DNA of 64,000 nt from NCBI RefSeq assembly GCF_000315625.1, contig NW_005434561.1:150294-214293 (forward strand). Direction: 5' to 3'. Below, piece by piece: positions 3,409 to 58,243 of this stretch; within the stretch, counting starts at the first letter, position 1, and each line of letters begins with the position of its first letter. This stretch comes from Guillardia theta CCMP2712 (taxonomy: Eukaryota; Protista; Cryptophyta). The translations under genes were made by a program, and so were the position numbers. Below the pieces are notes generated by a model, which worked only from the letters and a program-made list of their open reading frames with translations, was not told where the DNA came from and did not search any database.

Positions 3409-4086
3409 CTAAGATTTCATCTTAATGCCACATAGGCACATCGCCTGGTTCCTGAAAGTGTTTTTTGCGTTCTTCTTGATGATATTATGGACGGTCTCGA
3501 AGTAGTCACACATCACATCGTATATCATAGCCTGTTCATTATTGGAGACCGGTTTATTGTATTCTGATAAGAACATACTATAGATATATTGGGTTGGTAT
3601 CCTGTTGTGGATGTCATCGACGTTCGTTATGTCGATAACTGGTAAGAACTTATGTTTAAGCCAATGCTGGAAGACTGCCACAATGTCATTGTCTTCCGTT
3701 TCGGTCTGGTTGTTCGAGGGTTCATCATCTTCCTCGTCGCTCTCCTCCTCCATCCTCATCTTACAATACAGGACATACTTCTCGTCTCTTGATATCACAT
3801 AAGCGTTTTGTTCGAGTTTCCTCTTGACGTCCTGACGCGTCACATTCACGCTTATGCTAGCGTTCGATTTCAACCACTTCATAAATCTTGAATACAGGTT
3901 ACTAATCAAGAGCTTGTTGTTTTTGTTAGAATCTTTCTTATCCAATGCTATCACCTCCTCGGTGAGGAACTGTCTAAATAGGTCGGTGTCCTTCTGGTAT
4001 TGGTTCGTGTTGTACTGGACAGATTCGGGCACATCGAACTCCAATTCTGGATAAATCTTTTGAATGTTGTGGATGATGAGACTCAT
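3409..4086 (-). CDS. C-terminal part (winged-helix region and acidic tail) of the D5-like helicase, separated by a frameshift
   Basis: VPESVQYNTNQYQKDTDLFRQFLTE..LYSRFMKW is the usual continuation of D5 helicases; this frame is open upstream through FFKKDPNIDKKL. Confidence 0.75.
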   Translation of the reverse strand: MSLIIHNIQKIYPELEFDVPESVQYNTNQYQKDTDLFRQFLTEEVIALDKKDSNKNNKLLISNLYSRFMKWLKSNASISVNVTRQDVKRKLEQNAYVISRDEKYVLYCKMRMEEESDEEDDEPSNNQTETEDNDIVAVFQHWLKHKFLPVIDITNVDDIHNRIPTQYIYSMFLSEYNKPVSNNEQAMIYDVMCDYFETVHNIIKKNAKNTFRNQAMCLCGIKMKS

Positions 4087-5432
4087 AAGATAGGCAGGGA
4101 ACTTTTCAAGCTTTTTATCGATGTTAGGGTCTTTCTTGAAAAAGTTTTGTTTCTGATGTTGGCCGGTGGTTTGTCGCCGCTGTGGAAATATGCCTTATGT
4201 TGAATGACCCTCATACGTCTCCACGTTCCGCCGTCATTGGCGGCGTTTAGAGGCACCTTAGGGAACTTATTACAACAGAGTATGAACTTGGCCATAAGCC
4301 GAAACTCAACCGGTGTCTTATACAACCCCCTCGCGGTTATCATATCATTGCCTGTGTATTCCTTTACAATGCCTACGTTGAAGACGTCGTCCTCGTCTGG
4401 TTCTGATGTTGTAACCAATCGCGCGCCCTTCAATCGTTCGACCTCAGCACAGGCGGCATTTGATGCTGCCCTTTTCTGTGTGAAGAGTGCCACCGGTAAC
4501 GTCTTGGCATAATCTCCAAATGCCTTTTGAAGCAAGCTCATAAATGTGCTCTTTCCATTCGCCCCTGAGTCACCCCAGAAGATGTTAAACTGTTCCATCT
4601 TGCCACAGCAGGCAGCCATCCCGAGGATGTTCATAACATACTCCTTGACGTCATCATCAGCATACACCTGTGATATATACCTCTCTAACTCTTTCTGGGT
4701 CTTGTCCTCTGGGTTGTACTCGATGTAATCATAGCGTGTTGAGAGGCTGATATAATCGGTAGGCTGTCCCTTCCTGAATACTCCTTTCTCGAAGTCATAG
4801 ACACCGTTCTTGAATCCTAAGAGGTGCTCCTTTGTGTCTAGTTTCTCGATAAAGTAGTTGTCGCATAGGAGATATTTAACTTCCTTGATATAGTTGTCCT
4901 TCTTGCCGCTCTGCTTCAACAGTGTAATGATATTATCACACTGTGCGGACATCTTGGTATATCGTTCCTTCATTAAATCATCCTTCTCGTTCCTCATCTT
5001 CGCAACATAGTGCTTCTTCCTGTTGCCGTAGAGACTAACAATGACGGTCGAGATGTTGTTTGAGAGGATGCTCTCGGTTGTCTCAATCCAACGATTGATG
5101 CTGTCCATATAGACATACCATATGCGATTCCCTACATACTTGATAAGGGTATTGTTCATCACAATATCAGGGTATGCCTTGTCCTTGTAATCGATGATGT
5201 CGAGGTTGTAGTAGGAGGCAATGAGCACGGCGATGTCGAAGTCTGTGGGTTGTAAGAGTGAAGCGTCGATGAAATAGTTGAGTTCATCCATCTTCTCACT
5301 TGAGTGCTTGATGTGTATGAGCGAGCTATCGAATGACCTATCCACCCGGCTCAGTCGTTGCTTCTTGTCATCTTCGGACTCAACAACGATGTCATCATAG
5401 ATATTATCACAGATTCTTTCCTGAGGTGCCAT
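4083..5432 (-). CDS. D5-like superfamily 3 helicase (D5_N + ATPase), frameshifted near 4150-4190
   Basis: LDTKEHLLGFKNGVYD (D5_N), Walker A GDSGANGKST, LKGARLVTTSEP, VKEYTGND.ITARGLY, CCNKFP, DGGTWRR. Confidence 0.92.
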   Translation of the reverse strand: MAPQERICDNIYDDIVVESEDDKKQRLSRVDRSFDSSLIHIKHSSEKMDELNYFIDASLLQPTDFDIAVLIASYYNLDIIDYKDKAYPDIVMNNTLIKYVGNRIWYVYMDSINRWIETTESILSNNISTVIVSLYGNRKKHYVAKMRNEKDDLMKERYTKMSAQCDNIITLLKQSGKKDNYIKEVKYLLCDNYFIEKLDTKEHLLGFKNGVYDFEKGVFRKGQPTDYISLSTRYDYIEYNPEDKTQKELERYISQVYADDDVKEYVMNILGMAACCGKMEQFNIFWGDSGANGKSTFMSLLQKAFGDYAKTLPVALFTQKRAASNAACAEVERLKGARLVTTSEPDEDDVFNVGIVKEYTGNDMITARGLYKTPVEFRLMAKFILCCNKFPKVPLNAANDGGTWRRMRVIQHKAYFHSGDKPPANIRNKTFSRKTLTSIKSLKSSLPIL

Positions 5433-5596: not shown

Positions 5597-5827
5597 TCAT
5601 ATGCTCACTTCTTGCTTATTTGCCTGCTCTGCTTTCTTCTTGTAATACCTCTCTCTTGCCCTTTTGAGCTCCTTCTGTCTATACTCTGGGTCGGTGTTGT
5701 ACTTGATGCTCTTGTATATCCTCAATCGCGCGCGCTCCTGTTCATAGAATTCTTTGTCATTAACAATCCTCTTTGCGTAATACTTGGATTGAGGACAAGA
5801 ATATTGGGGGATGTTGATATTCTCCAT
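5597..5827 (-). CDS. Small basic helical viral protein
   Basis: 76 aa, KYNTDPEYRQKELKRARERYYKKK motif common in large-DNA-virus/PLV small proteins. Confidence 0.7.
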   Translation of the reverse strand: MENINIPQYSCPQSKYYAKRIVNDKEFYEQERARLRIYKSIKYNTDPEYRQKELKRARERYYKKKAEQANKQEVSI

Positions 5828-5916
5828 TATTGGAACCTTTATTTTCAGTGTATATAATTATTCTCACCTTTATATCATTTTTTGAGCTTTTATGAAATAT
5901 TGGTATGTCATAGGGG

Positions 5917-7824
5917 TTAATCTAGTAGTTTAGATATCCATTGACCATTCACTCTTTCTAAGGCATACTTTTTTATTGTGCTTGCCCTAACCTTACCCTC
6001 TGGCAAGTCATTGACGCGTCTCACTGCCTTCTTTATGCTTATCTCCTTTTTGTTCTCTTCATAGTAATTATGTTGATACTTGTTATAGGCATCCTTACCT
6101 ATCTTCTGAATATAGCGTTGTTGTGCCTTATATGCCAGATTCCGCGGGTCCTTATATCCTTGGGCTGGTGCTCTTGGTTGTGGGATTACTGCTTGGCGCA
6201 TGTTTGCGGGGGTGTTTGCGGGGGTGTTTTCTTGTATTGTTATCGGTCCCTCGTTATCATCGCGTGGTTCCTGCTTGATTCGTATAATATCGGTCGGCAA
6301 TAGTGCCTTCTTGTAGTTCTTATATTGTGCTATTATGCTGTTTCTCATCTTCAAGCTGACATCAGTTAAAATGTTCGCCGATGCGTTGTTTGAGTGTAGC
6401 CAAGTAATAAAGGACGAACGGAACATATTAACGCCCAACCGATGGCCTTGAAACATAGCCGCAAGGTACTTTTCCATGTTGCTCTTAGCCGGTGCGTTCA
6501 TGTTATTGACCTGCGTTATGTAATACTCACGAGGATATAAGGCGATGCTCTCCCTTACAAAGTCGCTAAGCTTGTAAGCCAATGGGTTTATATCATTAGG
6601 GTTGTTGAACCAACCGACCTTATACCTGATTGGGGAATGCCCTTTATGTGCCTTATTGAATACGTACATAATAAGGCCATTCTCTGGGACATAGACATAG
6701 TTGGTCTTTTTGTCTAGGTTCTCGAGCGTGTGCGTTATCTTCATATTGTTCAATTCACTCCTCACGGGTGGTGTATAGAGATATGACATCATTATAATGG
6801 TGTATGTATGGAATTTATAGGCATCTGTTGAGTTATCACTGAATGCCTTTATGAATGTGTCGAGCATCTCCTCGGTCATGTCCAGTAGCATTCCAAAGGG
6901 AAGGAATGTTTGCTGCTCGTACTTGTTCAGTCTGTTGATACCTTCCTGTGATAGGATGATGCCCATATGAAAGTCGGTCGTTATCATACTCATCTTATAA
7001 TACAGTTCGTGCTCATCTCCTAGACATATCTTTATCAATCTTGTAATGGCCTTTAAGTCATTCCAAAATGTGCTTAGTGATTGGCTTTTATTGAACCTAT
7101 AAACGAGCATATCAAGGATTATCGCCCTGTGATTCTCAACCATCCACGTGAGATTCTCATCTATCCTATTCGATAGCGTCTTATCAATTATGGATTTGAG
7201 CACCTGATATGTGTTCTTGTCATTGCTTACCTTTCCGCCTACATACTTATTATCTTTTATCTCTTGGAGGGTGGGCTTGTGGATATAATTGAGGTTTTGG
7301 TATTGCTCCTTAGTCAAGTCATAGGCGTATATCTCGTTTGTCCAGCTATTGGGACCGTTTATGTTATTATCGATTCTCTCTTTCATCTGTTCCATTTTCT
7401 GGTAGATAGTGAAGGCATATCTATCATCATTGTAGAAGTCGAACTTGAAGGTTTTGATTGACTGCGTTATGTCCTTGCTAATATCATCTGAAACCTTCCT
7501 AAGCAGTTTATAGCTACTTGGAAGCCTGTATTTCTTGTTAAGAGGGTGTTTGATGGTCCTTAGTGGGTTGTCCTTTGGAACTGGTGTTCTTGGGTCTATT
7601 ATCTGAATGGCTGGCAACACTGCCGGAGGTTCTGTGGCCGGGATTGGTTGGATTAGTTGTCTTGGTTGTCTTGGTTTCTTCTCATTCTTGGCCTCAGTCG
7701 GTTTCAGGTAATTAACGGGCTTATATCTCTGCGTCGGTTTCCTCTCCCTAGCGGGGGTTGCGCCCCCCGACGGCGCTGTTCTTTTGCTCAAGCTTTTGCG
7801 CGAAGCGGAAAAGGTTGCGGCCAT
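5917..7824 (-). CDS. Tyrosine recombinase/integrase (PLV type)
   Basis: YTPPVRSE (Arg I), FNKAHK, LGVNMFRSSFIT (N-x-x-R in place of H-x-x-R), KMRNS...KNYKK (Tyr nucleophile); long basic N-terminal extension. Confidence 0.85.
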   Translation of the reverse strand: MAATFSASRKSLSKRTAPSGGATPARERKPTQRYKPVNYLKPTEAKNEKKPRQPRQLIQPIPATEPPAVLPAIQIIDPRTPVPKDNPLRTIKHPLNKKYRLPSSYKLLRKVSDDISKDITQSIKTFKFDFYNDDRYAFTIYQKMEQMKERIDNNINGPNSWTNEIYAYDLTKEQYQNLNYIHKPTLQEIKDNKYVGGKVSNDKNTYQVLKSIIDKTLSNRIDENLTWMVENHRAIILDMLVYRFNKSQSLSTFWNDLKAITRLIKICLGDEHELYYKMSMITTDFHMGIILSQEGINRLNKYEQQTFLPFGMLLDMTEEMLDTFIKAFSDNSTDAYKFHTYTIIMMSYLYTPPVRSELNNMKITHTLENLDKKTNYVYVPENGLIMYVFNKAHKGHSPIRYKVGWFNNPNDINPLAYKLSDFVRESIALYPREYYITQVNNMNAPAKSNMEKYLAAMFQGHRLGVNMFRSSFITWLHSNNASANILTDVSLKMRNSIIAQYKNYKKALLPTDIIRIKQEPRDDNEGPITIQENTPANTPANMRQAVIPQPRAPAQGYKDPRNLAYKAQQRYIQKIGKDAYNKYQHNYYEENKKEISIKKAVRRVNDLPEGKVRASTIKKYALERVNGQWISKLLD

Positions 7825-8119: not shown

Positions 8120-8401
8120 GATAGGTTGTTCCCGGCCTGTCGGCTTTGGGAATCGAACCCGCGTCGTTACAGTGGCTAGCGGCCCTATATCCCAAAAAGG
8201 CTAAATTGCCATACTAATGCCCAAGACATAGTTATATATATAGGGCTGTTGGGAGGGAGGAGGCAAGAGATAGAGTATGGTTCGTTGGATGAAGAGGAGG
8301 GAGATGATGCCTGAGGGAGATGATGCCTGAGGGAGATGATGCTATTATCCTCTATTGAATATGTTTTTTCCCTCTTGAAAAAAAAGATAGTAATAAAACA
8401 A

Positions 8402-8535
8402 CCAAGGATAAGGGGGGTGAAAGATAAGGGGGGGTTTTGAAAAGTATTTTACAAATCCATCACAAAAGGTCCAAACACTTACCAAATACCCCCCCTTATC
8501 CTTGACCCCCCTTATCCTTAGTTCATTCACTACTA
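8402..8535. repeat. ~135-bp self-complementary hairpin repeat, copy 2 (inverted relative to 3177-3310)
   Basis: Reverse complement of copy 1 with a few substitutions, including the loop AAAAGGTCCAAACACTTACCAAATA and the flank GTTCATTCACTACTA. Confidence 0.9.
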
Positions 8536-8808
8536 AACAATCAAACAATGTTGAAGAAATAAATGACTTAGTAGCTCAAAGGGGTATGTGTGAGCGTTAA
8601 AAGGTTAATCGGAAGTTTGCGTCAATCACTTAGTAGCTCAAAGGGGGTGGTCAATTGACCACCCAACTTAGTTGGGTGACTATTTAATAAAAACATCATA
8701 GGATGCTCACATGTTAGTAGTTGCGCCTCTTAGAAAGGCCCTTATATTGATTACATACGGTGTGTTATATTTTTTACCCCCTCACCCCACGTGTATATTG
8801 TGTTTTAT

Positions 8809-9383
8809 ACATTGCTTCTTCGGACATTTAGAGGGCTGACAAATAAGCCCCTATTTGTTCCTTTTGGTCACGAATGGTCACGACATTGCTTCTTCGGACA
8901 TTTAGAGGGCTGACAAATAAGCCCCTATTTGTTCCTTTTGGTCACGAATGGTCACGAAAGCATTTATTCAGACCATTGTAAGAGCTGACAAATAAGCCCC
9001 TATTTGTTCCTTTTGGTCACGAATGGTCACGACGACATCGCACAGCGCATTGTAAGAGCTGACAAATAAGCCCCTATTTGTTCCTTTTGGTCACGAATGG
9101 TCACGACGACATCGCACAGCGGCATGAGCTCTCCATCTCCCCGGGCCACATCTATTCATAGAGGTTCTACGGACATATAGCTAGATATTGGGGGAGGTCA
9201 TCATATGAATGATGTATTCCCGGTAGTGTGCTAGGCTCTGACAAATATGGGGTAAATTTGCTGAACAATTATGACAAATTTGTTCAAGTTGAGCTGTAAA
9301 ATTCTGAACTTTTACTGACAAATTGTTCAATATTTGTCAAATTGGTCATGAATGGTCACGAAGCAAATACTCTTAGAGCTGAC
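8809..9383 (+). repeat. Terminal array: 49-bp conserved unit x4 plus a diverged fifth copy, separated by 25-26-bp variable spacers (att-like)
   Basis: GCTGACAAATAAGCCCCTATTTGTTCCTTTTGGTCACGAATGGTCACGA at 8835, 8909, 8984, 9058; diverged copy 9315-9361; final GCTGAC at 9378. Confidence 0.9.
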
Positions 9384-10330
9384 GGAGCAGTGGAAGGAGC
9401 TGAAGCACAACTACGCTCGGTCGTTCTAGTAGGAGGCACCGATGGCATCTTTGTGAGAGGCCGCTTATGGCACCATACAAGACTTCTGGAGGGAAAGCCG
9501 ATGGAACGTGTTTGGTCTGTTTGTTTTCAATCCGCTGCCAATTCCTACTTTCGTTGCCTAGGTTCTATGCAGCTTTGTTTGAGCTTAGCTTTGCTTGAGC
9601 TTAGCTTTGCTTGAGCTTAGCTTTGCTTGAGCTTAGCTTTGATTTTTTTTCGATTGATCATTATTAAACCTTCTTTGCTTTTTGATTACAATCCGGCCAA
9701 TGTTTGTTTGCGTGAGTTTTCCTTGAGTGGATCAGGGGATGTTGGATCTTGGTTTACACGCCTCTTTCAAGAAATCCATCACCGTGACAGCAAGGGATCT
9801 CATGACTTCGGATGACTGCGAGAAGAAGCAGAGCATTCAATCGCTGCCAGTCCTCGGTGAGGGTATTCATTCATTCTTTCTCAATACCGTTCACTCGTTT
9901 AACACTGACTGAATAGCAAGGAGAGCGATGAAGCCCGCAGAACCGCCTCAGAGAGAGATCACCGATTGACATGGGTTTAATTCGTAACGTTGTCAGCAGG
10001 CGCAATTTCTATATCCGTTCTTAAGTCACAAGCCGGGCCTTGCGCCTGCATATCCTTGGCTAATCGAGTCTCCTTCATCGCAGACCCATCCGTGTTCCGC
10101 TTCTCTCGGATTGCTTTGCGCCTTCTTCCATCCGTTATCATGCTCCCAGAAAGCGCTACGGCTGAGCTACAGGCAGCTGATGAGCGCGCATCGGGCAACA
10201 GCTCATGACAGCTGCAGATCGGGCCACCGTACACCCTCGAGCCCCTCGAGCCCTCAGAGCCGGGCGCCCAGGACGAGGCTGACGGAGCAGTGGAAGGAGC
10301 TGAAGCACAACTACGCTCGGTCGTTCTAGT
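9378..10330 (+). repeat. 53-bp identical direct repeat (9378-9430 and 10278-10330), likely the 3' end of tandem host paralogs
   Basis: GCTGACGGAGCAGTGG...CGTTCTAGT occurs twice, 900 bp apart; encodes LTEQWKELKHNYARSF-stop. Confidence 0.85.
9575..9641. repeat. 16-bp tandem repeat (CTTGAGCTTAGCTTTG) x~4
   Basis: Directly visible. Confidence 0.9.
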
Positions 10331-18574: not shown

Positions 18575-19505
18575 GGCTATATCGGGCGCTAAGCGAAAGC
18601 TGGCTGACCAGATAGTCGGAGATCTCACTCTCAGTGCTCACGGCCGACGGGCCCCGGTCAGGACCCGGCGCGGGCTCACCCAAGAAAGCCAATGATCCAC
18701 GTTATCACCCCCACCCCCTCCTACCATCACCCCACCTCCTTCCCCAAAGTCTGGAGAGTGTGGTTTTATCACCCCCAAATATTCCTTTATTTTGAGACAT
18801 ATCAATAGGTAGGGGTAGTGACCCCCCCGGAAAGGAGCCTCATGGATTTTACCCCCCAGCTGGCACCAATGGCGTCTCCCCCCATGGCCTGACTTGTGTC
18901 ATGCCGCTGCCGCTGATGACACTTCTACTCCTCCAGCTCATCGTCTCCTGCTGCTCCTCGTCTCATGCTGCTCTTCGTCTCCTCGTGCTCCTCGTCTCCT
19001 CGTGCTCCTTGTCTCGTCCTCCTACTGCACTGACTCCTGCCCATTATCGTTCCTGAGCTCGTCGGCGGCTTGATGTCCTGTCTCCTTGTGCCCCATCGCC
19101 TCACGTGTGAAAATCTTTTGCTCCTGTCTTATAATCCATCAACACCATCGTATGCCCTCATTCCTTCCTTCTCTCCGCTTTTCTCTATCGCATCTCGTCC
19201 TTTCCCTGGTGATTTTCTGCATCACCTCCCCATTCCTCTCTGTCGAACTCTTGGTAACCACCTGCTCCTTCACGTTCTTCATCGCTCTTCATCCCTCCTC
19301 TTGCCTCACTCGTCGTCCTATCACACGAAGATAACATGATGACTCTCGCTTCGAGTTCGTGTCCTCAAACCTAACCCGTATCTTGATCTGATTGGTTTCG
19401 CATAGGTCGTGATGCTCGCATCACAGTTGCGCATCCTGTGACGACCATCTGCCGTTGACTTGGTTGCTGGATGAGCAGCAGCCGATAGCTGAGAGGAGAC
19501 ACACA

Positions 19506-22421
19506 ATGACGTCTACCGTCCCCTGGCACGATGTCGGAGCCGGGTGCATTGCCCTGATTGGAACTGTTGCGCTATGTATCTTAGCCTCGCTGAGGCTGGA
19601 CAACATGTCAAACATCCTCAAGAGCGGGAGTCTGAAGAAAGTGATCATCGAGTCAGAACAGAAGTTCGAACCACTCGGAAGATTTTGCAAGGACATCGTC
19701 CTCTTGTCACTGATCCTGCTGTTCACGTATCAGAGTGAGTACTACCCGGTCTTCCCTCACCTTGCCAAGGAGCATGACATGGATATGTTCTGGTTTGCGA
19801 CTCTGCTCTTCCTGGCATACTCCTTCACCCGTTGGCAGAAGTCCAGGACGGACGACCTGCTGGGGCGGGAGCAGACGGAGGAGTGGAAGGGGTGGATGCA
19901 ATTTATGTTCCTGCTGTACCATTACTGCGCTGCTTCAGAGGTCTACAACATCATCAGGGTGATGATCACGAGCTACCTGTGGATGACGGGGTTCGGGAAC
20001 TTTTCTTTCTTCTACATCAAGAAGGACTACGGGATCGTGAGGGTGCTGCAGATGATGTGGAGGCTGAACTTTTTTGTCTTCCTGCTCATGATTGTGCAGG
20101 GCAACACGTACATCCTCTACTACATCTGCCCCCTCCACACGTTCTTCTTCCTAGTGACATGGCTGACCATGCGGGTCTGCTCCAACCTCAACTACACGAA
20201 GTGGGGAGTGAGGATCAAACTGTCTGTGGTTGCAGTGGTCATCTTTGCGGTCTGGGATGGAGCTCCATGGCTCTTCGACCTTATCTTCGGCTCTTTCATG
20301 GGCCGGGCGCCATGCAAGGGAGCGACGTCTGGGTTCCTGTACGAGTGGTATTTCAGGACGACTTTGGATCACTGGAGCACGTTCCTGGGCATGATCTTTG
20401 CCCTCAACTACCCCTTCACCAACATGTGGTTCAAGGAGCTTGCAAAACTTCCTGCTGCCTCGCAAGGAAAAGTCACCTTGGTCGTTGCCGCTGTCTCTTT
20501 GACGCTCATGGTACTCTGGTTTTGCTTCATTTTTACCCTCCCGAAGCTCCAGTACAACAACACCAACGCCTTCCTGGCTCCGGTCCCCGTGCTCAGCTAC
20601 ATCCTCCTCAGGAACCTGACCCCCTACATGCGGACATGGTACTGCGACATCCTGCATGACTTCGGCAAGACGACTCTGGAGACTTACCTGCTGCAGCATC
20701 ATGTCTGGCTGACCTCCAACGCCAAGACTCTCCTGCAGCTGATCCCCGGCAGCCCCAAGTGCAACTTCTTCGTCTGCACCATCCTCTTCTTCGCCTTGTC
20801 CCGCGAGACGCACAGGCTGACCATGTCTTTGAGGGCGGTTGTGCTTCCAGACTCCAAGGTACCCTGCCTCAGGAACTCGTGCCTGTTCCTCGCGGCCCTC
20901 GGGGTCTCGTACGGCGTCTCCTTCCTGCTCGTTACTCAGGTTCAGGTCTTGTTCGTCCGGCTCTGCCTCCTTGTCCTGATCGCCATGGCCTGCACTGCTG
21001 GCGTCTTCCGCGTCCTCCAGCGGACCAGCTCGGAGGAGTACGGGAACGCGGTGAAAGACCTCAGCCTCCAGCTCTTCGAGAAGGCTCCAGTCATGGGCCT
21101 CATCTTCTTCCTCCTCATCATCTTCACCCTGCGAGTTTCCACCTCCTCCTCCAGCTACGTCCCTTCCCACCTCGACTGCCTCTCGGCCCTCAGCGCCGTC
21201 CCGGGCTCGTGGATCTCGACGCTCCCGCTGGCAGATAAGAAGGCCAGGAAGCTGAGGAGCGGAAACCACCTTGCCGTCTCTGAGGTCAGCTCCAGCTGGC
21301 ATTCGGACTCCATGACCGTGTCCAGCTGCCTCGGGGCTGGGAACGCCGCTAAGATGAACCAGGTGGCGTCTTGTGAGATGCGTGCGTTCCGCTTCGATGA
21401 TGGGCCGGGCTCTCGAGCTCTCGGCTGCAACTTCCGCTTCCTGTCCAAGGACGCTGCTCGGGCTCAGCTGGGGAAGGGGACGCGGGTGGTGATCTTCGGG
21501 GATAGCGAAGCTCGCAACCTCTACTACGCGATCCGACGGGCCGTCGGGCTCCCGGTCGTCAACGTGAAGGCCCATGAAGACTTGACGCCCATCGGCAACT
21601 CCAGCGCTGCCATGCCGGACGTCGCGTTCCTGTGGACCCCTAAAGTCTCCGACGTCGCTGCCAGGCTGGCTACCGTCCTCGCAGACAGCAAGCCGCATGT
21701 GCTGGTGATGAGCTTCGGGCTGTGGGACGCGTTGCATGTGCGGGACTTGAGCGCGTTCGAGCAGAGCCTGCAGGGGCTGAGCAGCAAGTTCCAGGAGTCG
21801 CTCCCCTCCCTCCCCGTCAAGCCGCTCACCGTCTGGATGCCCCCGCCCACCATCCGCGACCACCTGCTGACCTCCAAGGAGAAGAAGCAGTTCATGACGG
21901 AGGCGCTGGTTGCGGGCTACCGCCAGAAGGCCCAGCAGGTCCTCAGCTCCAGCGGCCTCCAGCAGTTCACTGTCAACTTTCCGCTGCTCACAGCTCTCGA
22001 CGCCGCACAGCTGGACTCGACGGACGGGGTGCACTACAGTCAGGTCTACTACGACACGGCAGCCCAGCTCTTTCTCAACAGCCTCGAACACGCACGGAAG
22101 GCGGGGAAGGTCCAAGTGAAGGAGGAGGCGGCCAAGGGGAAGGGGACAGGGGGCATGGCGGACGCCTTGGCCTCCCTGTGCATGCTCGTAGCGGTTGGCT
22201 TCATGCTCGTGGCGTGTGACGCGTACGGAGGTTTCCTCCCCCTCCTCGCTGTGACCTTCGGCAGCAGAGAGATGGTAAAGGCAATGGACCTCAAGTCCAA
22301 CCCCTGCCCCTGCCTGCGATCCGCCGGGTCACTCGAGCGAGAGCACGGGGAGGACGAGGACGAGGGGGAGAAGGACGTGGAGACAGGCGAGGAGAAAATC
22401 CTTGCCAGCACTGCGACCTGA
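19506..22421 (+). CDS. Cas1p/CASD1/RWA-family O-acetyltransferase with C-terminal SGNH domain
   Basis: LGREQTEEWKGWMQFMFLLYHY, IRV.ITSYLWMTGFGNFSFF, YYICPLHT, EWYFR..LDH, GKTTLETYLLQHHVWL; C-terminal IFGDS..RN, GLWD, DGVH. Confidence 0.92.
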   Translation: MTSTVPWHDVGAGCIALIGTVALCILASLRLDNMSNILKSGSLKKVIIESEQKFEPLGRFCKDIVLLSLILLFTYQSEYYPVFPHLAKEHDMDMFWFATLLFLAYSFTRWQKSRTDDLLGREQTEEWKGWMQFMFLLYHYCAASEVYNIIRVMITSYLWMTGFGNFSFFYIKKDYGIVRVLQMMWRLNFFVFLLMIVQGNTYILYYICPLHTFFFLVTWLTMRVCSNLNYTKWGVRIKLSVVAVVIFAVWDGAPWLFDLIFGSFMGRAPCKGATSGFLYEWYFRTTLDHWSTFLGMIFALNYPFTNMWFKELAKLPAASQGKVTLVVAAVSLTLMVLWFCFIFTLPKLQYNNTNAFLAPVPVLSYILLRNLTPYMRTWYCDILHDFGKTTLETYLLQHHVWLTSNAKTLLQLIPGSPKCNFFVCTILFFALSRETHRLTMSLRAVVLPDSKVPCLRNSCLFLAALGVSYGVSFLLVTQVQVLFVRLCLLVLIAMACTAGVFRVLQRTSSEEYGNAVKDLSLQLFEKAPVMGLIFFLLIIFTLRVSTSSSSYVPSHLDCLSALSAVPGSWISTLPLADKKARKLRSGNHLAVSEVSSSWHSDSMTVSSCLGAGNAAKMNQVASCEMRAFRFDDGPGSRALGCNFRFLSKDAARAQLGKGTRVVIFGDSEARNLYYAIRRAVGLPVVNVKAHEDLTPIGNSSAAMPDVAFLWTPKVSDVAARLATVLADSKPHVLVMSFGLWDALHVRDLSAFEQSLQGLSSKFQESLPSLPVKPLTVWMPPPTIRDHLLTSKEKKQFMTEALVAGYRQKAQQVLSSSGLQQFTVNFPLLTALDAAQLDSTDGVHYSQVYYDTAAQLFLNSLEHARKAGKVQVKEEAAKGKGTGGMADALASLCMLVAVGFMLVACDAYGGFLPLLAVTFGSREMVKAMDLKSNPCPCLRSAGSLEREHGEDEDEGEKDVETGEEKILASTAT

Positions 22422-26623: not shown

Positions 26624-29600
26624 TTAATTGTCCAGGTTCTGTATCTCCAGCTGTGACGGAGCTGGAGGCGCCTCTCGTCCTCTCTCAGGGTTCCACACTC
26701 GCACGAAGTCTGTTCCGATCTCGATCGCTGAGACCGACCCAGACCTTCGTCGCTGCACCTGCCCCGTTCGCAAGCTGCTGCTCGAGGACGCGCGGTTGAA
26801 GGCGAGCCGAAGGCCCCGCCCATCGAAAGGCTCCACCTGGTCGGAGCCGATCTGAATGATTGAGAGTCTGGGGCGCACTTTCTGCTTCTTCCTGCAGGAA
26901 CGCATCCAGCTGATGGCGTACGTCAGGATGCCACAGACCAAGACGCCGGCCAAGGCGTAGAGAGCGATGGTGGCCTGGAAAGGAAGGGAGAAAGAAGAGA
27001 CAGGGGATGAGGCCGCCAGGTTCGAGACAGTAGCGTCTGAGTTCTGCACTCCCAGCGGCAGTCCTCGCTTCTGAAACTCGTCGTTGAGGTTGTTCATCCT
27101 CAGCTTGCCCGCCACGCCTGCTGCGCTCTTCTCGTTGCTATCGTACACGCCAAACTTGACGTTGATGCCTGACCCGCCTCTTCGAGCTGCCTGCACGCTG
27201 TCGATCTGCACCAGCGACACGTCGACCGACGCCACTGTAGCCACAGAGATCCTGAAAGCCGTCCTCCTCGTCTCGTCGAACTGCGCGACAGAGAGGGGAA
27301 GACCGACCGACATCTCAACTTTGTAGTTGCCCAGGTTGGGGGATGGGGATGACGGTGAAGATCCAGTGGAAGAAGGCGATGCCGACGACGAGTTCCCTTG
27401 AGTCTAAAGAAGAAGAATCAAACTCGAATTCGCACAAGAAAATGCGGACAATTGAAGCATAGACAGACGCTGAACAACACCAATCAAAAAACTCACCCTC
27501 GTGTCGCATGGCAATGTTACGGTCCGATTCACGTAAATCGTGCGATTAACATAAACCGTCTGCGAGAATAAAAATTTCAGATAAATCTCCAAATGAATGA
27601 GATTTCGTATTGAAAGCTTATCTGACAAAAAAAAAGAAAAGAAAAAAGAAACAAACAATGCAAAATCAAACAACAACAAAAACGATGGTCACCTTGGTCT
27701 CGCAAGGCTCCATGATCGTCCTGTTGATGTACACCTCCTTGGGTACGTACACTGTGTTGTTGATGTACACCTCCACAGGCACCTCCACCGTCCGGTTGAT
27801 GTACACCTCTACAGGGACCTCCACCGTCCGGTTGATGTACACCTCGTACGGCTCTCGGATCGTCCGGTTGATGTACACTTCAACAGGAACAACCACCGTC
27901 CGGTTCACGTACACCAGCGTTGGCACCTCCACCGTCCGGTTGATGTACACTTCCGTCGGTACGTACACCGTGTTGTTGACATACACCGTCTGATCCGATC
28001 GTCCCCACCCAGTACAAAACACGCCCGTCACACACTCGTACTTGCAAAGCAACCCAAAGCCCCTTTCCTCCTCTGCCCTTCCCCTCTCCTTCCCTCCCTC
28101 TCTCAGCCCCAAGCCCCTTCCTCCCAGACAAGCCCGTCCTCTCTCTCCCTCTCTCACCTTGGTCTCGCAAGGCTTCATGATCGTCCTGTTGATGTACACC
28201 TCTACAGGCACCTCCACCGTCCGGTTGATGTACACCTCTACAGGGACCTCCACCGTCCGGTTGATGTACACCTCGTACGGCTCTCGGATCGTCCGGTTGA
28301 TGTACACTTCAACAGGAACAACCACCGTCCGGTTCACGTACACCAGCGTTGGCACCTCCACCGTCCGGTTGATGTACACTTCCGTCGGTACGTACACCGT
28401 GTTGTTGACATACACCGTCTGATCCGATCGTCCCCACCCAGTACAAAAACACGCCCGTCACACACTTCGTTGCGAGATCTCTCCCCAATACACTCACACT
28501 CGCACACACCCCTCCCTCCCTTCCTCCCNNNNNNNNNNNNNNNNNNNNNNNNNNNNNNNNNNNNNNNNNNNNNNNNNNNNNNNNNNNNNNNNNNNNNNNN
28601 NNNNNNNNNNNNNNNNNNNNNNNNNNNNNNNNNNNNNNNNNNNNNNNNNNNNNNNNNNNNNNNNNNNNNNNNNNNNNNNNNNNNNNNNNNNNNNNNNNNN
28701 NNCGGTACCTCCACCGTCTGGTTCACGTACACTACCTTGGTCACCTCCACCGTCCGGTTGATGTACACTTCCGTCGGCACGTAGATCGTGTTGTTCACGT
28801 ATACAACCTGCCCCCCACCCCAAGCCGTCAGTCTCTCCGCCCCGTGCTCGTGCCTCCCCGCCACCTCCTCTCCTCCCTCCGTACCTTGTCTACGCTGCGG
28901 TTCACGAATACCTCCTTCGGTACCTCCACCGTCCGGTTGATGTACACCACAACCTCCTTCTCCACCGTCCGGTTGATGTACACCTCGTACGGCTCTCGGA
29001 TCGTCCGGTTGACGTATACGACCGTCGGCACCTCCACCGTCCGGTTCACGTACACCAGCGTTGGCACCTCCACCGTCCGGTTGATGTACACTTCCGTCGG
29101 CACGTACACCGTGTTGTTGACATACACCGTCTGATCCGATCGTCCCCACCCAGTACAAAAACACGCCCGTCACACACTCGTACTTGTAAAGCAACCCAAA
29201 GCCCCTTTCCTCCTCTGCCCTTCCCCTCTCCTTCCCTCCCTCTCTCAGCCCCAAGCCCCTTCCTCCCAGACAAGCCCGTCCTCTCTCTCCCTCTCTCACC
29301 TTGGTCTCGCAAGGCTTCATGATCGTCCTGTTGATGTACACCTCCTTGGGTACGTACACTGTGTTGTTGATGTACACCTCCACAGGCACCTCCACCGTCC
29401 TGTTGATGTACACCTCCTTGGGTACGTACACTGTGTTGTTGATGTACACCTCCACAGGCACCTCCACCGTCCGGTTGATGTACACCTCTACAGGGACCTC
29501 CACCGTCCGGTTGATGTACACCTCGTACGGCTCTCGGATCGTCCGGTTGATGTACACTTCAACAGGAACAACCACCGTCCGGTTCACGTACACCAGCGTT

Positions 29601-32600
29601 GGCACCTCCACCGTCCGGTTGATGTACACTTCCGTCGGCACGTACACCGTGTTGTTGACATACACCGTCTGATCCGATCGTCCCCACCCAGTACAAAAAC
29701 ACGCCCGTCACACACTTCGTTGCGAGATCTCTCCCCAATACACTCTCGCACACACCCCTCCCCTCCCCTTCCTCCCTTTCTCGCCCCCTTGCCCCCCCCC
29801 CTCCCCCTCCAATACCCCCAACGTCCTCAAACGTGCCCCCAGCAATGCCCGCTCTCCCTCCCTCACCTTGGTCTCGCAAGGCTCCATGATCGTCCGGTTG
29901 ATGTACACCTCGTACGGCTCTCGGATCGTCCGGTTGACGTATACGACCGTCGGTACCTCCACCGTCTGGTTCACGTACACTACCTTGGTCACCTCCACCG
30001 TCCGGTTGATGTACACTTCCGTCGGCACGTAGATCGTGTTGTTCACGTATACAACCTGCCCCCCACCCCAAGCCGTCAGTCTCTCCGCCCCGTGCTCGTG
30101 CCTCCCCGCCACCTCCTCTCCTCCCTCCGTACCTTGTCTACGCTGCGGTTCACGAATACCTCCTTCGGTACCTCCACCGTCCGGTTGATGTACACCACAA
30201 CCTCCTTCTCCACCGTCCGGTTGATGTACACCTCGTACGGCTCTCGGATCGTCCGGTTGACGTATACGACCGTCGGCACCTCCACCGTCCGGTTCACGTA
30301 CACCAGCGTTGGCACCTCCACCGTCCGGTTGATGTACACATTTCTTGGAACATCAATTATTCGATCCTTGTAAATTGTATTGTTGACGTACACAACCTAG
30401 GTCGCCCTTTATTTTGATTGAATGAAATGAAATTCAGAATTCACCTTCTCGTTGCAAGGTAATTCGACTGTTCGGTTAATGTAGACCTCTTTTGTGATGT
30501 AAATGATTCGATCAACATAAACTGTGTTGTTAATCTTTGAATAGTCAGAATGAATTCAATGTTAGATTCAATTTGTGTCTGTGTACCTTTGTTTTGTTCC
30601 TCTCGTGCTTATTATCATCAATAGCATTCTCATCATCTATAGAATGTTCATCGGTGAATTTGTTCAATTGCAAGCTTTTCATACCATCCTCGTCATCTTC
30701 TTCATCTTCTTGATCGCCTCCATTTTCTTCATCTGAATGAAGCATTAATTTCGCGCAATCCATGGCACATGTGGCTGCATGAAATCCGGGGTTGTAAAAT
30801 TACCGTCAGCTTGTGAGTCTTCGCCATGTGATTTGTCGTCTTCGTTGTCATGATTTTCCTTGCTTTGATTCTTTTGATCCACTGGAGTTTTGTACACGTA
30901 CACAATTTTTTCAATAGGACGATCAATGTATACAATTTTTCCACCTGCAAATGAGTCATGGATACAAGAAACTTCAATCGCTGGAGTCTTACAATCACTG
31001 GCACTTCAACAGTGCGATTCAAATAAACTATCCGGTCCTCCCCATATTTCTTGCCACTTTCCTCATCCACATAGACTTTTTTCTGAACCTGCCAAAAATT
31101 GCTTCAGTCGCATCATAGCGGATATGAAATGCGTCCGCTACTCACCTCTATTGGCACTTGTTCTTTGACTTTAATGAACTTTGGCACTTCAACTGTCACA
31201 TTGAGGTACACAGATTTTTCCACAGTGTTGTTTCGCACAATCTGTATTTGTGTAAGAACATGCCCAAAAAAAAAACAAAAGTCTTCAAAAATGTTCACCA
31301 CTTTGCAGCATGAGCTCGACCCAACTTCAGACGCATATCCTTCTTGACATCTTGTACACACTGAAGAGTTCCCTTTGGAAAATGTCCCAGCTGGACAATC
31401 TACACAAGACGTGGATCCTTTTTCAGAGTATTGTCCAGCAGGACAAGGCATGCATGCAGAGCCCAACTGATAGAACCCAGCATTGCAAGTCCACGGACAA
31501 GAGTTCGTGCTCGAGCCTTTTATCTCCAAATATTCCGAGGAGTCTGGCTTGTTCGAGCACGGTATGCATTCCATAGAGTCAAATCCCACTTTAAATGTTC
31601 CCGGATTGCACGGCATACACGTTGACGACAGCTGTGACTTGAAATGTCCAGGCTCGCATACACAGTCTGCCCTATTCGGCCTTTCATTGCAAGAAGGAGG
31701 GGGACACTGGTGTGGGGAAACAATTAGTACTAATGTGAACACTTCACATCGACTTACTCTCTGTGTGTTCAATTGCATATAGTTTGCAAGATCAATGGTC
31801 AGAATAGGGTATTAAGGTATGAGGCAGGGATTGCGGACTTACAACCTGGAAAATTTCAAATCATTATCGGGATTCGATGAAACATTGTCTTACATTCTAT
31901 AAATAAATCAGAAGCGGAGGAATTCCAATTAAAATCAAAAGTTTCAGTACCAACAAACTAAACGAATGTGACTGATCTTACCGGGTTGTCCTGTACACAA
32001 AGTGAGCCAAGCACAATTTCAAGAAATGAAGCAGGTGGTACTTACGTAGAAGCACTGAATAGAAGAAAGTTGGAATCCACGGGAGGAAAGCGCAATTCAA
32101 GTAAATGCTTCAAATTTCATGAGAAGGCAATGTAGACTTACATACTGCAAAGAAGAGGAATTTCGAAAGATTAAATGATCAGATCACTGTTCAACAAGGA
32201 AAGGCAAGAATCTTACATTCTTCTTGAAGGATGAAGGCTGTTTGGTTTAACGAGAAACAATCCAGTCAGATTAAAAAATGTTTTCAAACAGGATGAGAAT
32301 TACCCCCTGGAGACGAAGGAGCAAAGAGAAGGAAAACCAAGGGTGCATTTCAGACCATAGGTGCAATCGTACAAAAGATCAAAATTAAAAGCTTACCGGC
32401 TGCAAAAACAAAGTCAGCACAATGCTAAGAATGGAAAAACTAATCCATAAGATCAAGTGATCAAAGGTTCAAGGGATCAAGGATCAAGGGATCAAATATG
32501 TCATGCACAAAAACTCTGACTCACCCCCTGTTGATGCGAAAATGAACAAAAAGTAGAAAAGAAGAAGATTCAGAAACTTGAAAGTATTCAAGAATAGAAA

Positions 32601-34489: not shown

Positions 34490-37350
<2,861 letters not shown>

Positions 37351-37425: not shown

Positions 37426-39221
37426 ATGGGAGATGAGACAGGACGTGTATGATATGAAGGTGAGTAATGACGAAGCATGAGATGCAAGTTGATTGCTCTT
37501 GGTGTTATCAGCACCTCAAGTTCTACCGATTTGAGCTCTCAAAACAAGACCCAAACGCACTGCTCTCCTTCCCTGCGGTGATGCTTTGCCTGCCGGTTCG
37601 AGTTTTCATCATCATATCAGGATGTGAGAGTCGCACATGAAGAGCTTGAGAGAAGAATGGAGAAGTGACGCGATCATGCTGCGACAACAATTCTCTGAAT
37701 GTTTGCAGGTTCCTCACAGATCTTGAAAGAGACATGAACCGCGACTGGTACACGACTTATCCAGTGAGTTGCTCTCGTTCAACTGCCTGCCGTCCTGATG
37801 TTGCTGGTCCCTGCAAAAGGCTGCAAGGTCAGCCGGAGCAAACATCTCTCATCCTCCCACCGTCTTTTGCTTCTCTTCCTTGGCACAAGTGAGAAGCTCG
37901 ACTGACGAGGAGGCGGATCGATGTCTGCGTTGGATGCAAGCCAATCTGGTCGCCAATGTTGGCAGCAAGGCGGGAAGGAAGGACCCTGACTTGACCCTGA
38001 TCGAACCCTCCTCTCCTTCCTCGCCCTCCTCTGCTTTCACACCGGTCGATTTCGAGCTGAAAAAGCAGCTGAGAAATCGAATCGTTGCTAACCGTCTCCC
38101 TTCGCTCACCTTCAGTGCAAGGTTTCTGCGCCTGAGCTGTACTCAGTTTTGACGTATGCGCGCAGTGAAGAGCTGGAGGACGCCAGGCCTGGACATGATG
38201 GAGGAATGGGTAGTGAGGCGGGAGCGGAAGCGTCAGGTAGCTTGGGGGAGCAATGCAGGAGCTCGTGGCAAAGGCGGCAAGTTGAAATCATGGCAGGAGA
38301 GCTCAGTGATCATGCGGCGAAGAGGAAGAACCGACAGGTTGTGCCGGTGAGCATGCAAGGGTGCGAGGGAATGGAAGACCTTAAGGCGCTTCTGCTCAAG
38401 GGAAAGAGAAGGAGCATGTTTGAGTACGAGCTGCGAGGTGATGTGGCTGCCTTCCTCGTCCCCTTCCTCCTCCTTCCTCTTCTCATCATCCTTGCAGTGA
38501 TCGACGTGGACAAGCTCTCGGAGCTCGGAAGACTGGAGGCGCCGCCTCATCCTCATCCTCCTCAAACGGTCAGAGACATTGCCCGCTAAGGACGTTGACG
38601 ATGAGGAGCAGGTGAAGAATGCGGTCCAATCCCCTCGGCATCTTGTCCGATTCAAAAGCGTAAGCGAGTGGATTGAGGGCAGGGCAAGCAAGAAAGGAGG
38701 AGGAGGGGGAGGGGGAGGAGGAGGAGGAGGAGGAGGAGGAGGAAGAGGAGGAAGAGGAGGAGGAGGAGGAGGAGGAGGAGGAGGAGGAGGAGGAGTAGAG
38801 TTTTTCTGAGACGCAAGATCAGGGTGAGAGACTTCCGCTGCCTTCCAGCTCCTTCAGGGACTTGAGGTCAATCGATCTTCTGCTTCAAACCCTCAGCTGA
38901 TTGCGTGCAGGCTGCTGAAAGAGCACTTGCTCGAGGATGAGAGTTTCATCCAGCAGGTTTGTTGCTTCATCCACATCTTACCATTTGATGGTTGACTGAG
39001 ACTTGCTCGCAACCTTTCCTCGTCTTTCTCTGCCTGTCGTTTCTCTTCTCTATCTGCTCCTGTTTTTGGTTGCTCACTTCTTGCGCATTTCTCTCCCCTA
39101 TCATTGTCTCCCAAGAAGTTGCAACCTACCGTTAGTTTCTTGTTGCTGTCAGATCGCTTGCGCAAGCTCTCATTGCATTTCAGGCTGCCATCACACGCCA
39201 GCAAAGCTTGAGGCGACATAG
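37426..39221 (+). CDS. Hypothetical multi-exon protein with poly-Glu tract
   Basis: Series of short coding-like segments bounded by GT-AG; (GGA)n at 38696-38793; no recognisable domain. Confidence 0.4.
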
Positions 39222-43116: not shown

Positions 43117-43235
43117 TCTCACATTCTTCTCGTCTGTTCACCTCCTTTCACATTCTTCTCGTCTGTTCACCTCCTCTCACATTCTTCTCGTCTGTTCACC
43201 TCCTCTCACATTCTTCTCGTCTGTTCACCTCCTCC
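43117..43235. repeat. 29-bp tandem repeat x~4
   Basis: TCTCACATTCTTCTCGTCTGTTCACCTCC repeated. Confidence 0.9.
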
Positions 43236-57835: not shown

Positions 57836-58243
57836 GGCCGGCTGCTCTTACTACGGGCCGGCTGCTCTTACTAAGGGCCGGCTGCTCTTACTAAGGGCCG
57901 GCTGCTCTTCAGGCTTACCGTGCCCGCACCGTCTAAGGGCCGGCTGCTGAAGAGTCTTACTAAGGGCCGGCTCAGTGCTCTTACTAAGGGCCGGCTCTGC
58001 TCTTACTAAGGGCCGGCTGCTCTTACTAAGGGCCGGCTCCTAAACCCTAAACCCTCTCTGAGCTCCATTCGCTCAGAGAGTCAAACAGGTCGCGTCTCGC
58101 TTGACGGAATACAAGTTTGTTAGACTTGTACTAGTCCAAAGTCACGCAGACGTCACATCGACCTTAGTTGTAACAAGACAGTTTTTGCTCAAGACCGAGT
58201 TTAATGCACACGGAAAACCAGCATTGAGGAGCACATGAGAGAT
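56615..58243. repeat. ~145-bp inverted repeat (56615-56761 and 58103-58243), apparently a hAT-transposase coding fragment
   Basis: Reverse-complement match with small indels; conceptual translation TSPKSRRRH...EEHMRDAASKFKSLGIATGVLYNTRWASALR contains hAT-like SPK and TRWxS motifs. Confidence 0.7.
57836..58038. repeat. 20-bp tandem repeat (GGCCGGCTGCTCTTACTAAG) x8 with short internal insertions
   Basis: Directly visible. Confidence 0.9.

What the first reader, a model, noticed from the sequence alone, without database searches (positions are those of the whole stretch)
8809..9430. Repeat-spacer array of att-like sites at the end of a tyrosine-recombinase PLV, ending exactly at the integration core
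Seen: four identical 49-bp units and a diverged fifth share the layout CTGACAAAT-N8-ATTTGT (inverted half-sites around 8 bp; N8 is AAGCCCCT in units 1-4, TGTTCAAT in unit 5), followed by the direct repeat TGGTCACGAA-TGGTCACGA. Units are separated by variable spacers (CATTGCTTCTTCGGACATTTAGAGG x2, AAGCATTTATTCAGACCATTGTAAGA, CGACATCGCACAGCGCATTGTAAGA, AGCAAATACTCTTAGA). A sixth unit starts with GCTGAC at 9378 and then switches to host sequence. Established: tyrosine recombinases use inverted core sites around 6-8 bp plus direct-repeat arm sites. Inference: each unit is an attP-like site, so the virus carries a tandem cassette of attachment sites. The variable spacers next to the crossover could tune target choice or record past integration/excision events, in an integron- or CRISPR-like way. 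I do not know a described equivalent in PLVs.
Basis: partly seen in the sequence, partly recalled or inferred. Interest (0 to 1): 0.88.

Follow-up and report, generated by a model that had tools for sequence, protein, structure and literature searches.

The report
Repeat array inside a virus terminal repeat
The "repeat-spacer array" is real, but it is the repeat-rich outer part of the terminal inverted repeat of an already known virus-like element in the alga Guillardia theta: probably a row of protein-binding sites multiplied by ordinary unit duplication, not a record of past events.

Summary
The sequence facts are confirmed: four identical 49-bp modules at 74/75-bp spacing (window 8835-9106), and a diverged fifth at 9315-9361. 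The window is the telomeric end of Guillardia theta scaffold JH993077.1. The element is one of the polinton-like viruses (PLVs) described there in 2015.

- **Location.** The array lies inside a ~1.1-kb terminal inverted repeat (window 8261 to ~9380). The other end of the ~23-kb element carries the same modules and linkers, inverted.
- **Array dynamics.** The two arms differ only by which whole unit is duplicated. Right arm: S1,S1,S3,S4. Left arm: S1,S3,S3, then unread.
- **"Spacers".** There are three types, related to each other. They have no meaningful match elsewhere.
- **Evidence for function.** The 49-bp module is identical in all copies while the linkers have drifted. The terminal module (palindrome plus a 10-bp-phased doublet) is conserved in position in a metagenomic relative.
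- **Recombinase.** The adjacent 635-aa protein has a Cre/XerA-like fold and invariant R, R and Y.
- **Junction.** It falls in GCTGAC, about 40 bp outside the nearest palindrome. The same GCTGAC opens a 53-bp host repeat 900 bp away.

Best reading: end-recognition binding sites amplified like a minisatellite. The integron- or CRISPR-like reading is not supported. The left junction could not be fetched.

The parts
8261..9383 (.). Right arm of the terminal inverted repeat (TIR) of the integrated PLV. The outer limit is uncertain, between 9379 and 9383.
   Evidence: L005 1-747 is the reverse complement of window 9022-8261. The arms are identical apart from repeat copy number, linker type and one substitution. 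The outer limit comes from the end of homology with L002.
8809..9106 (+). Tandem array of four 74/75-bp units. Each unit is a ~25-nt linker (S1, S1, S3, S4) plus an invariant 49-bp module.
8835..8883 (+). 49-bp module, copy 1: palindrome TGACAAAT-N8-ATTTGTTC, a 6-nt link, then two 9-nt direct repeats 10 bp apart. Identical copies lie at 8909-8957, 8984-9032 and 9058-9106.
   Evidence: 4 exact matches, 0 expected
9107..9313 (+). Decayed stretch between the array and the terminal module. It starts with a 15-nt copy of the start of linker S4, holds an S1-like 16-mer (9165-9180), and two degenerate palindrome-like sites (about 9238-9260 and 9262-9287).
   Evidence: families D4, D5, D6, D9; inverted pairs I13, I15-18
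9315..9361 (+). Terminal module: perfect palindrome TGACAAAT-N8-ATTTGTCA (9316-9339), AAAT, then the doublet TGGTCATGA-A-TGGTCACGA (9343-9361). It is orthologous to the terminal module of relative L002.
9362..9383 (+). Tip of the element: a 16-nt linker-like stretch ending in the near-palindrome CTCTTAGAG, then GCTGAC. This is the element/host junction.
9378..9430 (+). 53-bp stretch beginning with the junction GCTGAC. It is repeated exactly at 10278-10330.
   Evidence: 53/53 identical
10278..10330 (+). Second copy of the 53-bp stretch, in host-like DNA 900 bp from the junction. It is either an unoccupied paralogous target or the template of a filler copy.
8297..8342 (+). 16-bp tandem repeat in the inner TIR. 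The right arm has 2.9 copies; the left arm has one fewer.
8400..8523 (.). 39-nt-arm inverted repeat (AAGGATAAGGGGGG motifs) inside the TIR. The same motif type recurs upstream of the recombinase gene in L002.
   Evidence: (I1); only sub-threshold hairpin hits in Rfam
5917..7824 (-). Tyrosine recombinase, 635 aa, intact ORF. Its start codon lies 437 bp inside the TIR's inner edge.
3409..5432 (-). D5-like primase/superfamily-3 helicase. It is read in two ORFs here (one change of frame), where homologues have one protein.

Best explanation
**What it is (shown).** The feature is the repeat-rich outer part of the right terminal inverted repeat of a ~23-kb polinton-like virus. The virus is integrated about 54 kb from a telomere of Guillardia theta scaffold JH993077.1. 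The same array sits, inverted, at the other end. Each 74/75-bp unit joins a 49-bp module that is identical in all four right-arm copies to a ~25-nt linker that has drifted. The module is an 8+8-bp palindrome around 8 bp, followed by two 9-nt direct repeats one helical turn apart. A diverged copy of the module lies 18 bp from the tip. That terminal copy is conserved, in both motifs and in its distance from the tip, in a relative.

**How it most likely works (inferred).**
- The modules are binding sites for the element's own end-recognising protein or proteins. The most likely one is the Cre-like tyrosine recombinase encoded just inside the repeat.
- The terminal module is the working site that positions the reaction at the tip.
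- The four inner modules are a lineage-specific amplification. They arose by unequal exchange or replication slippage of whole units.
- They add binding sites, as subterminal transposase sites or lambda arm sites do. They store no information.
- The unit spacing of about 7 helical turns would put bound proteins on one face of the DNA.
For: - **TIR.** The left arm (L005 1-747) is the reverse complement of window 9022-8261. TGGTCACGA and CTGACAAAT occur in the element only in the two arms.
- **Unit duplication.** The arms read S1,S1,S3,S4 (right) against S1,S3,S3, then unread (left). A 16-bp repeat differs by one copy. The remaining ~550 bp are identical.
- **Related linkers.** Observed alignment scores were reached by only 76, 65 and 3 of 5000 shuffles for S1/S3, S1/S4 and S3/S4.
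- **Constraint on the module.** There are 0 differences in 4 x 49 bp, while linkers differ at roughly 40% of positions.
- **Conservation in a relative.** Window 9315-9379 aligns with the reverse complement of L002 2786-2852. Half-sites, the AAAT link, both doublet repeats and the TACTCT(T/A)AGAGC tip are kept; N8/N9 is free. After the tip, GC rises and homology ends. L002 has three such palindromes and further doublets in a different arrangement.
- **Recombinase.** The model has pLDDT 82. All top 50 PDB matches are tyrosine recombinases: Cre, XerA, TelA/TelK, Tn1549 Int and lambda Int. R355, R469 and Y504 are invariant in 60 relatives. A profile hit to XerA aligns the R and Y motifs.
- **More distant relatives.** These also carry palindrome-bearing tandem repeats next to the recombinase gene or near a contig end.
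- **Literature.** In the G. theta elements the recombinase genes lie close to the extremities (PMC4642659). PgVV terminal repeats are made of repeated units (bioRxiv 10.1101/2022.07.28.501842).
Against: - No binding data exist. Nothing in the sequence assigns the modules to the recombinase rather than to the primase-helicase or another protein.
- The junction is not inside a palindrome, so the palindromes are not crossover cores in this insertion.
- Only one close relative (L002) was available, and its contig lacks the replication genes. Covariation of the motifs with the recombinase could therefore not be tested.
- The outer ~360 bp of the left arm and the left junction could not be read.
- Identity of the 49-bp module could also be kept by recent duplication or gene conversion. 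Units 1 and 2 are identical throughout.
Confidence: 0.6

Rival explanations
1. Replication-origin iterons. The modules are repeated binding sites in the terminal repeat for the element's replication initiator (the D5-like primase/superfamily-3 helicase or a partner). They mark the genome ends as origins.
For: The modules are present at both ends of a linear-type genome. They are direct repeats in helical phase and include a palindrome, as in many viral and plasmid origins (established knowledge). The element encodes a primase-helicase.
Against: D5-type proteins have no known sequence-specific origin-binding domain (own knowledge). The relative L003 has a different primase-helicase architecture and also lacks the motifs, but its recombinase is diverged too (42%), so this does not discriminate. 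There is no direct evidence.
Confidence: 0.2
2. Neutral subterminal minisatellite. The array is a by-product of slippage or unequal exchange in a repeat-prone terminal region and does nothing. Only the terminal module, or nothing at all, is functional.
For: Copy-number differences between the arms occur in this array and in the 16-bp repeat. Units 1 and 2 are identical throughout. Relatives have arrays of unrelated sequence and period at similar places.
Against: Divergence is confined to the linker, with 0 of 49 positions differing in four copies. Both motifs of the module are conserved in L002.
Confidence: 0.1
3. Each unit is an alternative attP site, and the variable spacers tune target choice or record past integration or excision, in an integron- or CRISPR-like way.
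For: The palindrome with an 8-bp centre has the geometry of a tyrosine-recombinase core site. The junction falls in a GCTGAC identical to the first six bases of every module, and a host-like sequence 900 bp away starts with the same six bases.
Against: The same linkers occur in both arms. There are only three types and they are related to each other. They have no foreign match apart from one chance 20-mer in a GC-rich phage coding region. The junction is outside the palindrome centre. L002's junction reads differently. The linkers carry no ORF, and no leader-like polarity is seen.
Confidence: 0.05
4. Packaging signals. The modules are repeated recognition sites near the genome ends for the packaging ATPase machinery, as the A-repeats near the left end of adenovirus genomes are (own knowledge).
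For: The motifs are repeated, phased and close to the termini. The element belongs to the capsid/ATPase lineage related to adenoviruses (PMC4642659).
Against: Being present at both ends gives no polarity. There is no evidence of any kind here.
Confidence: 0.05

Closest known systems
Terminal inverted repeats built of repeated units in PLVs and large DNA viruses (PgVV-14T/16T; poxvirus, chlorovirus and asfarvirus termini)
   Same: The same sequence lies inverted at both genome ends, with tandem or iterated units inside it and copy number differing between ends or isolates. PgVV: bioRxiv 10.1101/2022.07.28.501842, Extended Data Fig. 1. The others are from my own knowledge.
   Different: Here the unit has a sharply two-part conservation pattern: a 49-bp invariant module and a free linker. 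The module is a palindrome plus a phased doublet that is shared with a relative.
Lambda-type attP (core sites plus arm sites)
   Same: A tyrosine recombinase is encoded next to the site. There are inverted half-sites around 8 bp and nearby direct repeats that could serve as accessory sites.
   Different: The crossover is not between the inverted half-sites. The sites lie in a terminal inverted repeat at both ends, not at a single attP. The modules are multiplied in tandem. Binding is untested.
Subterminal transposase-binding repeats (Mu, Tn7, CACTA/En-Spm ends)
   Same: Several copies of a short binding motif sit inside both inverted ends, with the outermost copy at a fixed distance from the tip (own knowledge).
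   Different: Those elements use DDE transposases. Here the only recognisable integration enzyme is a tyrosine recombinase.
Yeast 2-micron FRT sites in 599-bp inverted repeats
   Same: A tyrosine-recombinase target (inverted 13-bp elements around 8 bp, plus a third direct copy) is embedded in a long inverted repeat (own knowledge).
   Different: That system has one site per repeat on a circular plasmid, and its function is inversion for copy-number amplification. Nothing here shows inversion.
Integron attC arrays and CRISPR arrays
   Same: The superficial repeat-spacer look. For integrons, a tyrosine recombinase is also involved.
   Different: The linkers are ~25 nt, hold no ORF, are mutually related and are duplicated in both arms. 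They have no foreign protospacers, no leader polarity and no acquisition genes.
Crypton-type eukaryotic tyrosine-recombinase elements
   Same: A eukaryotic DNA element with a tyrosine recombinase. Integration is thought to use a short identity of a few bases with the target (own knowledge), which is comparable to the 6-bp GCTGAC here.
   Different: Cryptons have no terminal inverted repeats and no capsid genes. The overlap here is not confirmed, because the left junction is missing.

Membership tests
Viral/PLV terminal inverted repeat with internal tandem repeats | The same sequence is present in inverted orientation at both ends of the element | tested here: met
   L005 1-747 is the reverse complement of window 9022-8261. 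The outermost ~360 bp of the left arm were not fetched.
Viral/PLV terminal inverted repeat with internal tandem repeats | The repeat reaches the element/host boundary | tested here: inconclusive
   Right end: homology with L002's terminus stops at 9379, and host-like sequence follows. The left boundary is out of reach.
Viral/PLV terminal inverted repeat with internal tandem repeats | Head-to-tail units inside the repeat, with copy number variable between arms | tested here: met
Tyrosine recombinase superfamily (the 635-aa protein) | Two-domain Cre-like fold | tested here: met
   The model has pLDDT 82 and pTM 0.69. All top 50 PDB matches are tyrosine recombinases, with TM-score (target-normalised) up to 0.57 and best E 3.5e-4. 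Viral matches include annotated integrases and VLF-1.
Tyrosine recombinase superfamily (the 635-aa protein) | Catalytic Arg...Arg...Tyr at family-typical spacing | tested here: met
   R355, R469 and Y504 are invariant in 60 sequences. R469 and Y504 align with the box II Arg and the nucleophile Tyr of XerA (E 0.025). The two His positions are not conserved as His.
Tyrosine recombinase superfamily (the 635-aa protein) | Match to a curated family model | tested here: not met
   No Pfam or PHROG hit for the protein or for any of 60 relatives.
attP-type attachment site of a tyrosine recombinase | Strand exchange within the 6-8 bp between inverted core half-sites | tested here: not met
   The junction (9378-9383) lies about 40 bp outside the nearest palindrome (9316-9339).
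attP-type attachment site of a tyrosine recombinase | A short identical overlap with the target, left as a direct repeat at both junctions | tested here: inconclusive
   GCTGAC is shared by the tip and by the host-like copy at 10278. The left junction was not available.
attP-type attachment site of a tyrosine recombinase | The recombinase binds the sites | not testable with these tools
   No binding data. The tools offer no protein-DNA co-folding.
CRISPR-like or integron-like array | Unique spacers or cassettes of foreign origin between identical repeats | tested here: not met
   Three linker types, related to each other, the same in both arms. IMG/VR 20-mer scans gave 0, 0 and 1 hit, the last a chance hit. 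The linkers hold no ORF.
CRISPR-like or integron-like array | Associated acquisition machinery and polar growth | tested here: not met
   No such genes are among the element's ORFs. The arms differ by internal unit duplications.
Neutral minisatellite | Divergence spread evenly along the unit | tested here: not met
   0 of 49 module positions differ in four copies, against about 40% of linker positions.
Replication-origin iterons | Bound by the element's initiator; replication starts there | not testable with these tools
   Only geometry (phased direct repeats in both ends) is available.

The most novel reading that the evidence does not exclude
The modules are true recombinase sites, and strand exchange happens at the GCTGAC that opens each module. 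Every module would then be a potential crossover point. Recombinase-driven exchange between modules, rather than slippage, would make the arms differ. The 53-bp copy at 10278 would be an unoccupied paralogous target. This would give a PLV a multi-site, self-reshuffling attachment region inside its terminal repeats.
Probability: 0.1. Interest if true: 0.6.

Novelty: new member of a known kind. Interest (0 to 1): 0.3.

Why it matters
How tyrosine-recombinase PLVs with terminal inverted repeats enter and leave host genomes is unsettled. The 2025 cryptophyte survey (PMC12220804) notes only that they lack normal target-site duplications. A conserved terminal module at a fixed distance from the tip, next to the recombinase gene, is a concrete candidate for the end-recognition site. 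The GCTGAC overlap with a nearby host copy gives a testable hint about the joining step. Beyond that, the finding is an ordinary property of viral terminal repeats and of an element already described in 2015.

Tried and rejected
- **Recombinase, single sequence.** Pfam, PHROGs and PDB sequence searches gave nothing. A 9-sequence alignment gave a poor model (pLDDT 57) and non-significant fold matches. A 60-sequence alignment from the representative search solved this.
- **Relatives by protein pattern.** None found in IMG/VR or JGI metagenomes.
- **Relatives by DNA motif.** The doublet pattern hit only unrelated phage contigs with 10-bp TGACTGGTCA repeats. The palindrome-plus-doublet pattern hit nothing.
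- **Spacer 20-mers against IMG/VR.** The three scans gave 0, 0 and 1 hit. The single hit lies in a 64% GC phage coding region with no other similarity, so I take it as chance.
- **Shared CTGACA hexamer.** It occurs in the repeats of distant relatives L025 and L027. I rejected it as evidence. With about 88 hexamers in the module, a shared one is expected roughly half the time, and the counts are inflated by the repeats themselves.
- **Host flanks of the window and L002.** No homology, so there is no evidence for a conserved target gene.
- **Rfam.** Nothing in the array. There are only sub-threshold hairpin hits at 8400-8523.
- **Second G. theta PLV (L006).** No homologue of this recombinase and none of the motifs.
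- **Short contigs** for P0023 and others were useless for flanks.
- **Left junction.** L005 starts about 360 bp inside the left arm. No annotated gene lies within reach of the fetch tool.
- **Protelomerase-like reading of the recombinase.** TelA and TelK appear among the fold matches but below Cre and XerA, so there is no basis to prefer it.

Full report
**Where we are.** The 635-aa ORF at window 5917-7824 (minus strand) is 100% identical to a Guillardia theta CCMP2712 protein. The window is the last 64 kb of scaffold JH993077.1 and ends in (AGGGTTT)n telomere repeats. Positions 1 to about 9380 are the right part of an integrated polinton-like virus (PLV). Its identified genes are:
- a major capsid protein, identified by its relatives;
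- a DUF5754 protein;
- a D5-like primase-helicase.

It is one of the three G. theta elements of Yutin et al. 2015 (PMC4642659). That paper already noted a distinct tyrosine recombinase close to the extremities of these elements.

**The observation.** It is correct.
- The 49-bp module occurs four times without a mismatch at 74/75-bp spacing.
- The 10-bp-phased doublet occurs five times.
- The linkers are as quoted.
- Chance expectation is zero.
- Unit 5 (9315-9361) is separated from unit 4 by 207 bp of decayed repeat. This stretch holds two more degenerate palindromes.

**The key new fact: the array is part of a terminal inverted repeat.**
- Fetching the scaffold to the left (L005; window coordinate = L005 coordinate - 13227) shows TGGTCACGA and CTGACAAAT on the opposite strand at L005 1-188.
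- L005 1-747 aligns with the reverse complement of window 9022-8261.
- The terminal repeat therefore spans window 8261 to about 9380, roughly 1.1 kb. The element is about 23 kb long.
- About 550 bp of the two arms are identical. One unit of a 16-bp repeat is missing on the left.
- In the array, read from the inside outwards, the right arm has linkers S1, S1, S3, S4. The left arm has S1, S3, S3, and then the fetched DNA ends. One left module carries a single substitution, in the link between the palindrome and the doublet.
- The arms therefore differ by duplication of whole units built from the same small set of linkers.

**The linkers are not independent sequences.**
- S3 and S4 share their last 10 bases.
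- S1 aligns with both S3 and S4 better than nearly all shuffles do. Only 76, 65 and 3 of 5000 shuffles reach the observed scores for S1/S3, S1/S4 and S3/S4.
- Exact 20-mers of the three linkers found nothing in IMG/VR, apart from one hit in a GC-rich phage coding region with no further similarity.

**Evidence for function.**
- Divergence is confined to the linker. None of the 49 module positions differs among four copies, against about 40% of linker positions.
- A metagenomic relative, L002, has a recombinase 57% identical to this one. It has a homologous terminus.
  - Window 9315-9379 aligns with the reverse complement of L002 2786-2852.
  - Kept between the two: the half-sites TGACAAAT and ATTTG(T/G)CA, the AAAT link, both doublet repeats, and the tip TACTCT(T/A)AGAGC.
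  - The centre of the palindrome is free (N8 here, N9 in L002).
- Beyond the tip, L002 turns GC-richer and is unrelated to the window's flank.
- L002 carries three such palindromes and further doublets, but in another arrangement: inverted pairs inside a 155-bp repeat.
- So the two motifs and the terminal module are conserved, while the four-unit array is lineage-specific.
- More distant relatives also have tandem repeats with palindromes next to the recombinase gene or near a contig end. Their sequence and period are unrelated to these.

**The recombinase.**
- Curated models do not recognise it.
- With 60 relatives from the representative search, the model reaches pLDDT 82.
- All its top 50 PDB matches are tyrosine recombinases: Cre, XerA, TelA/TelK, Tn1549 Int and lambda Int.
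- Viral matches include an uncharacterised protein of Virus NIOZ-UU159 (E 1.5e-27), several algal giant-virus proteins, annotated integrases and VLF-1.
- R355, R469 and Y504 are invariant. R469 and Y504 align with the XerA catalytic motifs.

**The junction.**
- The element's tip reads ...CTCTTAGA-GCTGAC, followed by host-like DNA.
- Window 9378-9430, which begins with that GCTGAC, is repeated exactly at 10278-10330. There it is preceded by unrelated GC-rich sequence.
- Two readings fit.
  - The host had two copies of a target, and the element sits in one of them with a 6-bp overlap.
  - The 53 bp are a filler copied from 900 bp away during end-joining, primed on the 6-bp microhomology.
- Either way the join is about 40 bp outside the nearest palindrome, not in its 8-bp centre.
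- L002's junction reads GCAGAT at the same place.
- The left junction would decide between the two readings, but it was out of reach.

**Verdict.** The structure is a terminal-repeat array of a known element. Its units are most likely iterated protein-binding modules, amplified by ordinary repeat dynamics. The attachment-site-cassette and memory idea is not supported. What is modestly new is the conserved terminal module and the junction overlap.

**A note on my own handling.** In one search I wrote a scratch file that joins two adjacent fetched stretches of the same scaffold record. The sequence was unaltered and lacked the left tip, and I used it only as a BLAST subject. I flag it in case it counts as assembling the element; nothing was deleted.

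Noticed in passing
window 9378-9430 and 10278-10330: An exact 53-bp direct repeat whose first six bases are the junction GCTGAC. It is either an unoccupied paralogous target or templated filler DNA.
   Followed up: partly
window 63821-63976, 58039-58615, 61342-61360, 63640-63822: The window ends in (AGGGTTT)n telomere repeats, preceded by a 76-bp x 2.4 repeat. Short interstitial telomere-like runs occur in both orientations 2-6 kb inside. The PLV lies about 54 kb from the chromosome end.
   Followed up: no
window 8400-8523; L002 3484-3496, 3712-3741, 3795-3826: A long hairpin-forming inverted repeat of AAGGATAAGGGGGG-type motifs in the inner TIR, between the array and the recombinase gene. The same motif type is present in relative L002, and L003 has analogous C-rich/G-rich runs. 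Rfam gives only sub-threshold miRNA-like hits.
   Followed up: partly
L005 1098-8921 (left of the window, same element): An uninterrupted 2607-aa ORF with no gene model in the NCBI annotation. It has a weak collagen-repeat hit and is probably the fibre or attachment protein of the PLV.
   Followed up: partly
window 3409-5432: The D5-like primase-helicase is read in two ORFs (one change of frame), where phage and PLV homologues have a single protein. The NCBI model bridges it with an intron.
   Followed up: no
L004 (scaffold JH993521.1, 3845 bp): A small separate scaffold that duplicates part of the same PLV (capsid region) at 99.6-100% identity, with an N gap. It is either assembly redundancy or a second copy.
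   Followed up: partly
L006 (scaffold JH993048.1): A second G. theta PLV (capsid protein 56% identical). It has no detectable homologue of this recombinase and none of the motifs. It has 74%-identical inverted repeats at 4916-5129 and 19389-19603.
   Followed up: partly
window 27717-30339: Several blocks of 36/72/108-bp tandem repeats (CGTCCGGTTGATGTACACC... type) in GC-rich host DNA. It is probably a repetitive coding region on the minus strand.
   Followed up: no
window 36923-37044, 38695-38795, 43117-43234: A perfect (GAGCAG)x20, an (AGG)x34 and a 29-bp x 4.1 repeat in host DNA.
   Followed up: no
window 5597-7824 versus the NCBI gene model: The annotated 708-aa protein (EKX36252.1) fuses the 635-aa recombinase ORF to the next small ORF through a predicted intron. 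The metagenomic relatives end where the 635-aa ORF ends.
   Followed up: partly
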